Of a stretch of DNA of 64,000 nt, positions 29,240 through 32,295 are shown one piece after another. The number at the start of each line of letters is the position of its first letter. Within the stretch, counting starts at the first letter, position 1. The translations under genes were made by a program, and so were the position numbers. A model generated the notes under the pieces. The model saw nothing but the letters and a program-made list of their open reading frames with translations, was not told the origin of the DNA and made no database searches. This DNA comes from Macrostomum lignano (lineage: Eukaryota): contig NIVC01000672.1 of NCBI GenBank assembly GCA_002269645.1, positions 248,001-312,000 on the forward strand, in the 5' to 3' direction.

Positions 29240-32200
29240 AATTCAAGCCAGGCGACCCCCGAGTCCAGCGGCAAGTCGCCGCCGCCTCCGGTCGCTAGTT
29301 GGGCAGCGGTGGCGCGGCCGCCGACGTCCGGGCTGGCTTCGGTGATGTCCGAGCAGCTGGCCGACCACGAGCGCGAGCAGCAGCTCCGCCAGGACCTCCG
29401 GCTGGCCGCCAAGCTGCAGGCTCTGGCACCAGTCGAGGTTCAAAGCGGCAATGGTGAAGAAAGTCGGCTGGCAAAAGACGAGCACGAGGTCGCGAGTTCG
29501 AGTCCGGCTGGTCAGGGCGGCGAGTCTGACAGCGACTTTGTGCTGGCGCTGATGCTGCAGCAGGAATTTGACAGGGAGTTTGACAGACAGGTGCGACTCA
29601 GCGAGGCCAAGCTGAACGGCAACCAGAAGGTGAGAGTCAAATTGCTGGCTGACTGGATGGGCTGCTTGGGAATATTGGCATGGTTTAAGGGCTGACGCAG
29701 GCATTCTCTTAGATAACATCTAGTGACCTCAGTTGACCTCAGAATTTCTCTAGCGCCCTCATTAGACCTGACTTTCTCTAGTGACCTCAGTTGACCCCAG
29801 ACAATCTCTAGTGACCTCAGTTGACCCCAGACAATCTCTAGTGACCTCAGTTGACCCCAGACAATCTCTAGTGAGCTCAGTTGATCCCAGACAATCTCTA
29901 GTGACCTCAGTTGACCTAAAAAATCAGTAATAACCTTATCTCAGCCCAGCTAATCATTGATGACCCCAGGTGACCCCAGACCCCCTCTCCCCGCCGCAGG
30001 TGCGGGTGACGCTGTCCAACCACCTGCGCCGGGACACGACGGGCGCCCCGGCCTCGGACTCCGAGGAGGACCCGGCGGCCACCGCCGTGGAGCCGCCGCT
30101 GCTGCCGCCCGGGCCAGCGCGCAGCTTTAACTCGCGCGGCGTCTCCGGCCGCGGCGCCGACCTGCTGACGAAGCACGACGCCGAGATCTGCGGCCGGCGC
30201 AACGCGGAGCGAATGGCGGGCTTCGGGCACGCCGGCTTCCGCACCGGCGACACCGACGGCCTGCAGCTGGACAACCGCGTCTACAACAGCCTGAAGGTGC
30301 ACGCGGCACAGGAGGAGCGGCGGTCGGCGGCCAGGAGGCAGCGGGACAGCCAGCAGCAGCTGAGCCAGCAGGAGCAGCTGGAGCAGCAGAGGCGGCAGCA
30401 GCTGGACGAGCGGACCCGCCGGCTGCTGCAGCGCCTTGTGACAATCCGGCGGCTGGCGGAGGTCGGCGAGGTGCTGAAAGTGGGCGACCAGAGCCTGGTG
30501 AGCGGTGGGAGCCTTCATGTCCGCCTGACATCCCCACTGGTGCATCCCAATAGCGAAATCCCAATAGCAAGATCGCAGTAGCAAGATCTCAATAGCAAAA
30601 TCCCAATAGCAAAATCTCAATAGCAAAATCTCAATAGCAAAATCCCAATAGCAAAATCTCAATAGCAAAATCCCAATAGCAAAATCCCAATAGCAAAATC
30701 CAAATAGCAAAATCCCAATAGCAAAATCCCAATAGCAAAACTCTCAATAGCAAAATCCCAATAGCAAAATCCCAATAGCAAAATCCCAATAGCAAGATCG
30801 CAGTAGCAAAATCTCAATAGCAGAATCTCAATAGCAAAATCCAAATAGCCAAATCCCACTGCAACCGCCCCAATTTCCAGCTGATCCACGCCCGCTGCGA
30901 CTCGAACTCCCGCTGCAAGGGCGGCCGTCCGATGCCCCCTGATGTGGTCGTCAAGGTCTTCCGGCGGCTCTCCAGGTCGCGGCTCTCCTCCGCGGCAGCG
31001 GCAGCAGCGACGTCTGCGGAGTCTCAGCTGGAGGCGCCGTGCAGCCCGCGCGGCTCCCCACGCGCCCGCTGCCTGCGCGAGCTGCGCGGCCTTCGCCGAC
31101 TTCGCCGGGCGGGCGTCGCCTCGCCGGCCCCGCTGATGCTGCGGCGCCACCTCCTGCTGACGGAGCTCGTCGGGGCCAACGGCGTCGCGGCGCCCTCGCT
31201 GGCCGACTGCCTTGAAGGTGGCCTGCTGAGCGAGGCAGACTGGATGAAGGCCTGGGAGCTGACCGTGACTGCCCTGCGGAGCACGCTGCGACTGGCCAGG
31301 TGGGTGGGGAGTGATCTCTCATTCACCGAGCCCAGGCTGCCTGCTGAATACTGCCATTATACCCCAAGCATGAGAAATCCCTGAATTCCCCAGGCATGAG
31401 AAATCCCCGAATTCCCCAGCATGAGAAATCCCCGAATTCCTAAGCATGAGAAATCCCTGAATTCCCAAGCATGAGAAATTCCCAAGCATGAGAAATTCCC
31501 AAGCATGAGAAATTCCCAAGCATGAGAAATCCCTGAATTCCCCAGGCATGAGAAATCCCCGAATTCCCCAGCATGAGAAATCCCCGAATTCCTAAGCATG
31601 AGAAATCCCTGAATTCCCAAGCATGAGAAATTCCCAAGCATGAGAAATCCCTGAATTCCCCAGGCATGGGAAATCCCCGAATTCCCCAGCATGAGAAATC
31701 CCCGAATTCCTAAGCATGAGAAATCCCTGAATTCCCAAGCATGAGAAATCCCCAAATTCCCAAGCATGAGAAATTCCCAAGCATGAGAAATCCCTGAATT
31801 CCCCAGGCATGAGAAATCCCCGAATCCCGAAGCATGAGAAATCCCCGAATTCCCAAGCATGAGAAATCCCCGAATTCCCAAGCATGAGAAATCCCCGAAT
31901 TCCCTTAGGCATGAGAAATTCCCAAAATTCCCCCACCGCATCCCAGGCTGGTGCACGGCAACCTGGACGGCCGCCACCTGCTGTGGTGGCGCGGCTCCGT
32001 GTGGCTGACCGGCCTGTCCCGCTGGACGGACCGCGGCCACCCCCGCGCCGGCGAGCTCCTTCTGCGCGACTGCCGCGCCGTCTGCGGCTTCTTCGAGCGG
32101 GCGCGGCCCGGCCTGCCCGGCCTGCTGGAGGCGGCCGACCTGGCGGAGCTGCTGGGCGCCGGCGAGGCGGCGGGAGACGCGGCGGCGGCGACGGCGGAGG

Positions 32201-32295
32201 CTGCAGCTGCGGATGAAGAGAGCGGCGAGGAGGATGAGGATGATGACGATGATGCTGAGGAGTCTGGAGATGAGGCTGGGGATCTGTTACACTGA
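29240..32295 (+). CDS. riok3: RIO kinase 3-like protein, predicted catalytically dead; start codon unresolved
   Basis: Exons 29240-29629, 30000-30497, 30881-31299, 31947-32295 with consistent phases (552 codons). RIOK3 N-terminal signatures: LASVMSEQLA, SDFVLALMLQQEFDREFD...KLNGNQKV, TKHDAEICGRRNAERM, NRVYNSLKVHA.QEERRSA; kinase lobe VVVKVF...AGVASP...AAPSL...LVHGNL...LLRDCRAVCGFF. Confidence 0.9.
29720..29915 (+). repeat. 30-bp intronic minisatellite TCTAGTGACCTCAGTTGACCCCAGACAATC
   Basis: Tandem units in RIOK3 intron 1. Confidence 0.88.
30545..30850 (+). repeat. 14-bp intronic minisatellite AAAATCCCAATAGC
   Basis: Tandem units in RIOK3 intron 2. Confidence 0.92.
31365..31930 (+). repeat. 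AAGCATGAGAAATCCCCGAATTCCC intronic minisatellite
   Basis: Variable ~16-27-bp units in RIOK3 intron 3. Confidence 0.92.

What the first reader, a model, noticed from the sequence alone, without database searches (positions are those of the whole stretch)
29240..32295. RIOK3 homolog with an intact reading frame but every catalytic residue replaced: a RIO pseudokinase
Against human RIOK3 motifs, the P-loop STGKES reads KVGDQS, the catalytic loop HADLSEYN reads HGNLDGRH (catalytic Asp to Asn, Asn to His; codons 31960 and 31975), and the metal-binding IDVSQ reads TGLSR (Asp to Gly, codon 32011). The VxxK lysine, the RIOK3 N-terminal motifs, splice sites and 552-codon frame are intact, which argues for selection on a non-catalytic role. 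RIOK3 is tied to pre-40S particles and antiviral signalling; I am not aware of a described dead RIO kinase paralog.
Basis: partly seen in the sequence, partly recalled or inferred. Interest (0 to 1): 0.75.

Follow-up and report, generated by a model that had tools for sequence, protein, structure and literature searches.

The report
Catalytically dead RIOK3 paralogue in a flatworm
The flatworm Macrostomum lignano has a normal RIOK3 gene and also a second, fast-evolving copy that has lost the residues needed to bind and split ATP but keeps its ubiquitin-binding front end, so it is probably a non-enzymatic reader of tagged small ribosomal subunits.

Summary
Window 29240-32295 (+) is a four-exon GT-AG gene from Macrostomum lignano (GenBank PAA78666.1, "hypothetical protein"). 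Its closest solved relative is human RIOK3 (E=2e-56).

- **Dead by sequence:** P-loop STGKES reads KVGDQS, HADLSEYN reads HGNLDGRH and IDVSQ reads TGLSR. The beta3 Lys and alphaC Glu remain.
- **Not an assembly error:** three syntenic copies and an older assembly carry the same codons.
- **Not a decaying pseudogene:** all three copies are intact. The two diverged copies differ by 12 synonymous and 4 non-synonymous changes (dN/dS 0.12, P=7.5e-5), at least as constrained as the canonical gene (0.26-0.46).
- **An active RIOK3 exists:** PAA93645, PAA67553 and PAA48910 have intact motifs. The dead gene is their sister (300/300 bootstraps) on a branch 2.6 times longer.
- **Loss is regional:** family-invariant residues survive in the ubiquitin-binding N-terminus (17/21) and the linker (24/36), but not in the RIO N-lobe (15/46).

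Human data show that the RIOK3 N-terminus binds ubiquitylated 40S and that K290A/D406A blocks decay. I therefore infer a non-catalytic reader or antagonist of ubiquitylated 40S. This is untested. The start codon is unresolved. The result also contradicts a published claim that flatworms lack riok-3.

The parts
29240..29629 (+). Exon 1. It carries the SPW-like motif (ASWAAV, 29294-29311) and the MIU1-like helix region (SVMSEQLADHEREQQLRQDLRLAAKLQALA, 29339-29428). The MIU2-like motif DSDFVLALMLQQEFDREFD starts at 29528. The exon begins directly after an acceptor site (tttctgcag|AATTC). The first in-frame ATG is at 29345-29347.
   Evidence: AF2 predicts helices at residues 25-55 and 89-119 of P0001.
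29630..29999 (+). Intron 1 (GT-AG, phase 0). It lies at the same position and phase as intron 1 of the canonical M. lignano RIOK3. Most of it is a 30-bp minisatellite (29719-29916).
30000..30497 (+). Exon 2. It carries the end of MIU2, an acidic disordered stretch and the conserved helical linker (SRGVSGRGADLLTKHDAEICGRRNAERM...NRVYNSLKVHAAQEERR, 30132-30332). It also carries a Gln-rich insert, the alphaR helix (30402-30476) and the degenerate P-loop KVGDQS (30477-30494; canonical S-T-G-K-E-S).
30498..30880 (+). Intron 2 (GT-AG, phase 0). It lies at the same position and phase as intron 2 of the canonical paralogue. It holds a 14-bp minisatellite at 30544-30858.
30881..31299 (+). Exon 3. It carries the retained beta3 Lys (VVVKVF, Lys codon 30953-30955). 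The RIO flexible loop is replaced at equal length by low-complexity RLSRSRLSSAAAAAATSAESQLEAPCSPRGSPRAR (30965-31069). It also carries alphaC with the retained Glu (CLRELRGL, 31070-31093), the hinge LLLTELVG (31151-31174) and the first C-lobe helix.
   Evidence: pLDDT is below 50 over the loop replacement.
31300..31946 (+). Intron 3 (GT-AG, phase 2). It is not shared with the canonical paralogue, whose introns 3 and 4 lie elsewhere. Almost all of it is a 25-bp minisatellite (31363-31932).
31947..32295 (+). Exon 4. It carries the catalytic loop LVHGNLDGRH (31948-31977; Asp to Asn at 31960, Asn to His at 31975) and the metal-binding loop WLTGLSR (32002-32022; Asp to Gly at 32011). It also carries the conserved HPRAGELLLRDCRAVCGFF (32038-32094), an Ala-rich and acidic tail, and the stop codon TGA at 32293-32295.

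Best explanation
This is a lineage-specific duplicate of riok-3 in Macrostomum lignano that became a RIO pseudokinase (here called RIOK3-like).

Shown:
- It arose by DNA-level duplication of the flatworm's own RIOK3.
- It evolved about 2.6 times faster than its sister.
- It lost the P-loop Lys, the catalytic Asp and Asn, the metal-binding (phospho-acceptor) Asp, and the conserved flexible loop.
- It kept the RIOK3-specific N-terminal MIU-type ubiquitin-binding helices and the helical linker as well as the canonical gene does.
- It is kept intact under purifying selection in all three copies.
- The annotation that carries it was built from transcripts.

Inferred mechanism: like human RIOK3, it docks through its MIU motifs and linker onto 40S subunits whose uS3 and uS5 have been ubiquitylated. 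It cannot run the ATP-dependent step that recruits the uridylation and exonuclease machinery (TUT7 and DIS3L2 in humans). It would therefore act as a non-degrading reader. It would either be a natural counterpart of the K290A/D406A mutant, shielding or holding tagged 40S and competing with the active RIOK3, or a scaffold that couples tagged 40S to another output.

My confidence is about 0.8 that it is a maintained, catalytically inactive paralogue. It is about 0.35 for the specific model of binding and antagonising decay of ubiquitylated 40S. The figure given below is a blend of the two.
For: - **Identity and dead motifs:**
- **Same codons at three loci, all ORFs intact:**
- **Purifying selection:** window versus L002 shows 12 synonymous and 4 non-synonymous differences, dN/dS 0.12, binomial P=7.5e-5. 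The canonical copies over the same dS (0.022-0.030) give 0.26-0.46.
- **Active paralogue:** P0011, P0158 and P0159 carry ATGKES, VAIKVFK, LVHADYSEYN and IIDVSQ.
- **Sister relationship and rate:** sister in 300/300 NJ bootstraps, branch 0.90 versus 0.34. Tajima relative-rate tests give 95-109 versus 39-50 unique changes, P<=8e-5.
- **Shared gene structure:** introns 1 and 2 share position and phase with the canonical gene.
- **Regional pattern of retained family-invariant residues (dead versus canonical):** N-terminus 17/21 versus 17/21, linker 24/36 versus 28/36, RIO N-lobe 15/46 versus 38/46, C-lobe 19/36 versus 33/36. Fisher's test for front half against RIO domain within the dead copy gives P=5e-4. 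In the RIO domain, dead versus canonical gives P=2e-9.
- **Fold:** the RIO fold is still predicted with confidence, and the top structural matches are RIOK3 on the ubiquitylated 40S, 8zdc and 8zdb.
- **Functional precedent in human cells:** the N-terminal MIU1/2 region binds ubiquitin. K290A/D406A keeps ubiquitin binding but fails to drive 40S decay and raises uS3/uS5 ubiquitylation (PMC12008924). RIOK3 residues 1-230 still bind ribosomes, while K290A/D406A loses DIS3L2 recruitment and 18S oligo(U) tails (bioRxiv 10.64898/2026.04.26.720784).
- **Transcription:** the GenBank CDS matches my spliced model over 544 residues, and that annotation derives only from RNA-seq and transcript assemblies.
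Against: - No biochemical data exist for this protein. Inactivity and ubiquitin or 40S binding are both inferred from sequence.
- The selection test rests on 16 substitutions between recently duplicated copies. Gene conversion between the copies could distort it.
- No orthologue from another species was found. The searched collections also hold no other macrostomid RIOK3, so neither the age of the duplication nor long-term constraint could be measured.
- The first MIU-like segment is altered (LADHER in place of LAKELQ), although a second LAAKLQ motif follows it.
- The coding sequence sits at 72% GC and 86% GC3, against 56% and 61% for the canonical gene. Part of the divergence may therefore be compositional drift rather than adaptation.
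- The RIO domain still keeps about 40% of its invariant residues, the Lys-Glu pair and a confident predicted fold. It may still do something, such as contact 40S or bind nucleotide.
- The start codon is undefined.
- The AF2 model used an alignment of canonical RIOK3 proteins, so its confidence is partly borrowed from them.
Confidence: 0.6

Rival explanations
1. The gene is a redundant duplicate drifting towards loss. It has not yet been hit by a stop codon, and its dead motifs only reflect relaxed constraint.
For: The branch is very long and the relative rate is raised. The flexible loop has been replaced by low-complexity sequence. GC3 is extreme and Gly, Ala, Arg and Pro are enriched (38% versus 27%), which suggests compositional drift. 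Parasitic and other flatworms are reported to have lost riok-3 altogether (PMC4894443).
Against: All three copies are intact over 551 codons. dN/dS between the copies is 0.12-0.15 with P<=2e-4, lower than for the canonical RIOK3. The N-terminus and linker are conserved as well as in the canonical paralogue. All splice sites are intact, and the annotation that carries the gene was built from transcripts. At a protein distance of about 1.2 substitutions per site, a neutral sequence would be very unlikely to keep an open frame.
Confidence: 0.1
2. The protein is not really dead. It still binds nucleotide, acting as an ATP-locked switch that stays on the 40S, or it catalyses through non-canonical residues as some 'pseudokinases' do.
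For: The beta3 Lys and the alphaC Glu are retained, and the fold is predicted with pLDDT above 90 across the RIO domain. In RIO proteins, ATP binding and hydrolysis govern ribosome binding and release (established knowledge of Rio1 and Rio2; cited in the reference list seen).
Against: The P-loop Lys is replaced by Asp, which reverses the charge at the phosphate-binding position. The Asn and Asp that coordinate metal are both gone. The phospho-acceptor Asp is Gly. Only 15 of 46 invariant N-lobe residues remain.
Confidence: 0.15
3. The gene has taken on a function unrelated to ribosomes, for example as a ubiquitin-binding adaptor in a signalling pathway. Vertebrate RIOK3 has been linked to RIG-I/MDA5 regulation.
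For: The MIU motifs would bind ubiquitin on any substrate. Riok3 is reported to act with TRIM40 on RIG-I and MDA5 (PMC8363743, abstract). The RIO domain has changed strongly.
Against: The helical linker and about 40% of the invariant RIO residues are kept. Human residues 1-230, which span the MIU region and the linker, suffice for ribosome binding. That points to a ribosome-related role. No evidence for any other partner was found.
Confidence: 0.12
4. The dead motifs are a sequencing, assembly or annotation artefact.
For: The assembly is redundant, and older protein models of this gene are frameshifted (P0002-P0004).
Against: Identical motif codons occur at three separate scaffolds of Mlig_3_7. 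The same KVGDQS and LVHGN strings appear in models from the older, independent assembly. The window is identical to NIVC01000672.1 over 23 kb.
Confidence: 0.01

Closest known systems
Human RIOK3 (PDB 8zdb, 8zdc and 8zdd, bound to ubiquitylated 40S or pre-40S)
   Same: The architecture is the same: an SPW motif, MIU-type helices, the helical linker (TKHD..CGRRNA..NxVYNxLKxH..E.R) and a RIO domain. It is the best sequence match (E=2e-56) and the best structural match.
   Different: K261 is Asp, D406 is Asn, N411 is His and D423 is Gly. The conserved flexible loop (TLNEFKNRxKY..D.RF.K...K.NPRK) is replaced by low-complexity sequence. A Gln-rich insert lies before the RIO domain, and the tail is acidic. 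Overall identity is about 30%.
Canonical M. lignano RIOK3 (PAA93645.1, PAA67553.1, PAA48910.1; locus L004)
   Same: It is the sister gene (300/300 bootstraps). The two share the first two intron positions and lineage-specific strings (QKVRVTL[AS]NH, G[KR]PMP, LLWWR). Both are present in three copies, with dS of about 0.02-0.03 between copies.
   Different: The canonical gene keeps all catalytic motifs, has five exons, and sits at 56% GC and 61% GC3. It lies at a different locus, next to an adenylate kinase gene, whereas the dead copy lies downstream of Piezo.
Engineered human RIOK3 K290A/D406A and the kinase-domain deletion mutant
   Same: These also lose ATP binding or hydrolysis while keeping an intact N-terminus. 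They still bind ubiquitin or ribosomes but do not drive 40S decay. The window gene naturally carries a substitution at the D406 position.
   Different: They are laboratory mutants with the K290 Lys removed. The flatworm protein keeps that Lys, has lost more of the active site, and has been shaped by selection.
Pseudokinases that arose by duplication of active kinases, as a general class
   Same: Catalytic motif residues are lost while the fold is retained and purifying selection continues. Such proteins often regulate or compete with the active paralogue.
   Different: The members I know of are mostly eukaryotic protein kinase (ePK) fold proteins. My limited literature searches turned up no RIO-family example.

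Membership tests
RIO kinase family (Pfam PF01163) | RIO domain recognisable by profile and by fold | tested here: met
   RIO1 scores 76 bits, E=3.4e-21, above the 22-bit cut-off. Foldseek top hits are RIOK3, RIOK1 and Rio1 structures.
RIO kinase family (Pfam PF01163) | Catalytic set: P-loop STGKE[SA], beta3 Lys, alphaC Glu, catalytic-loop Asp and Asn, metal-binding (phospho-acceptor) Asp | tested here: not met
   The state is K-D-K-E-N-H-G, against S-K-K-E-D-N-D in more than 210 of about 275 RIO proteins. Only the Lys and Glu are retained.
RIOK3 subfamily | RIOK3-specific N-terminal region (SPW, MSEQLA and MIU helices) and helical linker | tested here: met
   17 of 21 N-terminal and 24 of 36 linker invariant residues are retained, similar to the canonical paralogue.
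RIOK3 subfamily | Groups within RIOK3 in a tree | tested here: met
   It is sister to the M. lignano RIOK3 inside the RIOK3 set in 300/300 NJ bootstraps. No RIOK1 or RIOK2 outgroup was included. However, RIOK1 structures score far lower (E=1e-16 against 2e-56).
Pseudokinase (sequence definition) | At least one of the three key catalytic residues (beta3 Lys, catalytic Asp, metal-binding Asp) is missing | tested here: met
   The catalytic Asp is Asn and the metal-binding Asp is Gly. The catalytic Asn and the P-loop Lys are also lost.
Pseudokinase (functional definition) | No phosphotransfer or ATPase activity | not testable with these tools
   This needs purified protein and ATPase, phospho-Asp and nucleotide-binding assays.
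Pseudogene (non-functional copy) | Disrupted frame or neutral evolution (dN/dS about 1) | tested here: not met
   Three intact copies. dN/dS is 0.12-0.15, P<=2e-4.
Retrocopy (processed duplicate) | No introns | tested here: not met
   There are three GT-AG introns, two of them at the same positions and phase as in the parent gene.
Ubiquitin reader of 40S (RIOK3-type function) | Binds ubiquitin or ubiquitylated uS3/uS5 through MIU motifs | not testable with these tools
   Only motif conservation (LAAKLQ, LALMLQQEFDRE) and predicted helices are available.

The most novel reading that the evidence does not exclude
The flatworm has evolved a natural 'anti-RIOK3'. This would be a catalytically dead decoy reader that occupies ubiquitin-marked 40S subunits and protects them from RIOK3-driven uridylation and decay. 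It would give the animal a tunable brake on ribosome destruction. Flatworms are known for degrowth under starvation and for regeneration, which is where such a brake could matter.
Probability: 0.25. Interest if true: 0.75.

Novelty: new variant of a known kind. Interest (0 to 1): 0.58.

Why it matters
A selected, naturally dead paralogue that keeps the reader module is a natural experiment separating binding from catalysis. If it antagonises the active enzyme, it would be an evolved regulator of ribosome turnover. I found no other described dead paralogue in the RIO family.

It sits in a laboratory model that has transgenesis (PMC5730564) and published gene knock-downs, so the idea can be tested directly.

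The finding also corrects the record. M. lignano has a canonical riok-3 as well as this derivative, whereas a published survey reported no riok-3 in any flatworm, M. lignano included. The gene may be lineage-restricted, which limits how general the result is.

Tried and rejected
- **Orthologues in other species.** A word-indexed search and an exhaustive HMMER search of 1.84 billion representatives returned only M. lignano sequences above 41% identity. A search with the canonical paralogue also found no other macrostomid RIOK3. The absence therefore says nothing either way.
- **Direct transcript evidence by exact look-up.** I tried the spliced protein with an SL-donated Met and with the first internal Met.
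- **Mlig gene identifiers in papers and supplements.** No hits.
- **Operon test.** I asked whether the upstream Piezo gene shares a transcriptional-unit name with this gene. The last protein search returned only an unrelated Piezo fragment.
- **Compensated frameshift as the cause of the odd flexible-loop segment.** The other two frames of exon 3 show no RIOK3 similarity, so I rejected this.
- **Non-coding RNAs.** An Rfam scan of the window found none.
- **Assembly artefact.** Rejected, because three loci and an older assembly agree.
- **Retrocopy.** Rejected, because introns are shared with the parent gene.
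Full report
**What is there.** Region 29240-32295 on the + strand holds four GC-rich exons: 29240-29629, 30000-30497, 30881-31299 and 31947-32295. They are 65-74% GC, with GC3 of 86%. Three GT-AG introns of 41-49% GC separate them. Joined, the exons give an open frame of 551 codons plus TGA. The translation matches Pfam RIO1 (E=3.4e-21). Among solved structures its best match is human RIOK3 (8zdb, E=2e-56), and RIOK1 is far behind at about 1e-16.

The window is identical to scaffold NIVC01000672.1 of the Macrostomum lignano assembly GCA_002269645.1. 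The protein is GenBank PAA78666.1, "hypothetical protein BOX15_Mlig019372g2, partial", at 100% identity over 544 residues, including all three splice junctions.

**The observation.**
- STGKES (S258-S263) aligns to KVGDQS (30477-30494).
- HADLSEYN aligns to HGNLDGRH, with D406 to Asn at 31960 and N411 to His at 31975.
- IDVSQ aligns to TGLSR, with D423 to Gly at 32011.
- The beta3 Lys (human K290) is kept in VVVKVF (codon 30953-30955), and so is the alphaC Glu (CLRELRGL).

The strongly conserved RIO flexible-loop segment (TLNEFKNRxKY..D.RF.K...K.NPRK) is replaced at equal length by low-complexity RLSRSRLSSAAAAAATSAESQLEAPCSPRGSPRAR. This is not a frameshift, because the other frames of exon 3 show no RIOK3 similarity.

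More than 210 have the state S-K-K-E-D-N-D at the seven key positions, and only the M. lignano copies of this gene have K-D-K-E-N-H-G.

**Not an artefact and not a decaying pseudogene.** The assembly holds three syntenic copies, each downstream of a Piezo gene. They are the window copy, PAA69189 (L001) and PAA72970 (L002). All three are intact and carry the same dead motifs. Protein models from the older assembly (P0002-P0004, P0012) are frameshifted chimeras but still show KVGDQS and LVHGN.

The window copy and L002 differ at 16 coding positions, 12 synonymous and 4 non-synonymous. This gives dS 0.028, dN 0.0033 and dN/dS 0.12. The probability of so few replacements under neutrality is 7.5e-5. 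The three copies of the canonical RIOK3 have the same dS (0.022-0.030) and give dN/dS of 0.26-0.46. The dead gene is therefore at least as constrained as the live one. The caveats are the small number of substitutions and possible gene conversion between copies.

**An active RIOK3 exists in the same genome.** The exhaustive representative search returned one protein at 41% identity, well above all other RIOK3 proteins at about 31%. It is also from M. lignano: PAA93645.1, with the further copies PAA67553.1 (named RIO3 by UniProt) and PAA48910.1. It has ATGKES, VAIKVFK, LVHADYSEYN and IIDVSQ, and it is about 42% identical to nemertean, brachiopod and mollusc RIOK3.

In an NJ tree of 36 RIOK3 proteins, the dead gene and this canonical gene are sisters in 300 of 300 bootstraps. 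Their terminal branches are 0.90 and 0.34. Tajima relative-rate tests against four outgroups give 95-109 unique changes in the dead copy against 39-50 in the canonical one (P<=8e-5).

The canonical gene (L004) has five exons. Its first two introns (after ...SSQK|VRVTL and ...KESV|VLHAY, both phase 0) match introns 1 and 2 of the dead gene in position and phase. The dead gene's third intron is not shared. The dead gene is therefore a DNA-level, lineage-specific duplicate and not a retrocopy.

**Where the protein has and has not decayed.** I took columns that are at least 90% conserved in 34 non-Macrostomum RIOK3 proteins and counted how many each paralogue retains.

| Region | Dead copy | Canonical copy |
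|---|---|---|
| N-terminal ubiquitin-binding region | 17/21 | 17/21 |
| Helical linker | 24/36 | 28/36 |
| RIO N-lobe | 15/46 | 38/46 |
| RIO C-lobe | 19/36 | 33/36 |

Within the dead copy, the contrast between the front half and the RIO domain is significant (P=5e-4). In the RIO domain the dead copy differs from the canonical one (P=2e-9). In the front half it does not (P=0.5).

AlphaFold2, run with an alignment of canonical RIOK3 proteins, still predicts a confident RIO fold. pLDDT is above 90 for residues of about 260-500, except over the replaced loop. It also predicts two long N-terminal helices over the MIU-like motifs. The best structural matches are RIOK3 on the human ubiquitylated 40S and pre-40S, 8zdc and 8zdb. 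Part of that confidence is inherited from the alignment.

**Mechanism (inferred).** The relevant facts come from human cells:
- The RIOK3 N-terminal region carries tandem MIU motifs that bind ubiquitin.
- K290A/D406A keeps ubiquitin binding, fails to support 40S decay, and raises uS3/uS5 ubiquitylation. The authors suggest that inactive RIOK3 shields the marks (PMC12008924).
- A construct lacking the kinase domain (residues 1-230) still binds ribosomes.
- K290A/D406A loses DIS3L2 recruitment and 18S oligo(U) tailing (bioRxiv 10.64898/2026.04.26.720784).

The flatworm protein keeps the part that binds and has lost the part that triggers decay. It carries a natural substitution at the D406 position, and it also lacks the Asp that RIO proteins use as phospho-acceptor (established knowledge of Rio1 and Rio2). 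I therefore propose that it docks on ubiquitylated 40S without committing it to decay. It would act as a competitor or brake on the active paralogue, or as a scaffold. This step is inference and nothing here tests binding.

Alternatives are that it still binds nucleotide, since the Lys-Glu pair is kept, that it serves an unrelated ubiquitin-adaptor role, or that it is drifting to loss. The very high GC3 and the enrichment of Gly, Ala, Arg and Pro (38% against 27%) suggest that compositional drift contributed to the divergence.

**Expression and the 5' end.** The GenBank annotation of this assembly was produced only from RNA-seq-guided and de novo transcript assemblies plus TransDecoder (PMC5730564). 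The annotated junctions therefore imply a spliced transcript. I could not obtain read-level evidence.

The frame has no ATG at 29240, which directly follows an acceptor site that is conserved in all three copies. The first in-frame ATG (29345-29347, MSEQLADHE...) lies downstream of the conserved SPW-like motif (ASWAAV). The 35-nt spliced leader of M. lignano ends in ...TTGCATG (PMC8629364). If it is trans-spliced at 29240, its ATG would be in frame and would give Met plus 551 residues. This is a hypothesis, and an upstream cis-spliced exon is equally possible.

**Comparison with what is known.** The gene is a member of the RIO family by fold and profile, and of the RIOK3 subfamily by architecture and tree. 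It fails the family's catalytic-residue test and meets the sequence definition of a pseudokinase. My limited literature searches found no described RIO-family pseudokinase.

A 2015 survey stated that there is no evidence for riok-3 in flatworms, explicitly including M. lignano (PMC4894443). The present data contradict that for this species, which has three canonical and three degenerate copies.

**Verdict.** This is a new variant of a known kind. Interest is moderate to high for people working on ribosome quality control and on pseudoenzymes. It is limited by the lack of orthologue and biochemical data and by a possibly narrow taxonomic range.

Noticed in passing
locus L004 5001-14234 (NIVC01000023.1); also L005 and L006: M. 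lignano has a canonical riok-3 with intact catalytic motifs, in three copies next to an adenylate kinase gene. A published survey (PMC4894443) reported no riok-3 in flatworms, including this species.
   Followed up: yes
window 27843-28460, 29719-29916, 30544-30858, 31363-31932, 32534-33239, 33699-34408: Every intron of the gene, and both flanks, consist mostly of different minisatellite arrays with periods of 32, 30, 14, 25, 23 and 22 bp. Array lengths differ between the three gene copies, so intron sizes are 370/580/677, 383/354/242 and 647/613/231 bp.
   Followed up: partly
window 29240-32295 versus L004: The dead paralogue's coding sequence is 72% GC with GC3 of 86%. The canonical paralogue is 56% and 61%. 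The protein is enriched in Gly, Ala, Arg and Pro. This suggests GC-biased substitution, possibly biased gene conversion, at this locus.
   Followed up: partly
window 29180-29240: The frame opens directly after a conserved acceptor site (tttctgcag|AATTC) and has no ATG there. The M. lignano spliced leader ends in ATG and would be in frame if trans-spliced at this point, donating the start codon.
   Followed up: partly
protein P0144 (Logan transcript contig of about 2.3 kb, organism unknown): This is a second RIO-like protein with a degenerate active site. It has LVHGNISERT (catalytic Asp to Asn, Asn to Thr) and a P-loop HTGQDA, keeps the metal-binding Asp, and has an MIU-like N-terminal motif (LMDEALAHQLQQLE). 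It may be an independent dead RIO protein.
   Followed up: partly
window about 5350-27655 (+): A large multi-exon Piezo-type mechanosensitive channel gene (about 2,427 aa) lies directly upstream. The same Piezo and RIOK3-like gene order is kept at all three copies.
   Followed up: partly
window 41154-42677 (+): A single-exon ORF of 507 aa made of ankyrin repeats (Ank_2, E=3.5e-28).
   Followed up: partly
window 49774-51447 (+) and 60332-62113 (+): Two long single-exon ORFs (557 and 593 aa) with no significant Pfam family. The second has only a sub-threshold CBM20 hit at its N-terminus.
   Followed up: partly
window 409-867 and 4315-4773: Two ORFs with identical translations lie 3,906 bp apart. 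This indicates a direct repeat of about 3.9 kb, rich in CLSV-type simple repeats, at the start of the window.
   Followed up: no
proteins P0002, P0003, P0004, P0012 (UniProt A0A1I8... entries): The UniProt models of this gene from the older M. lignano assembly are frameshifted or fused to neighbouring sequence, and are named after unrelated domains (RING-type, RPAP1_N). They should not be used as evidence for domain fusions.
   Followed up: partly
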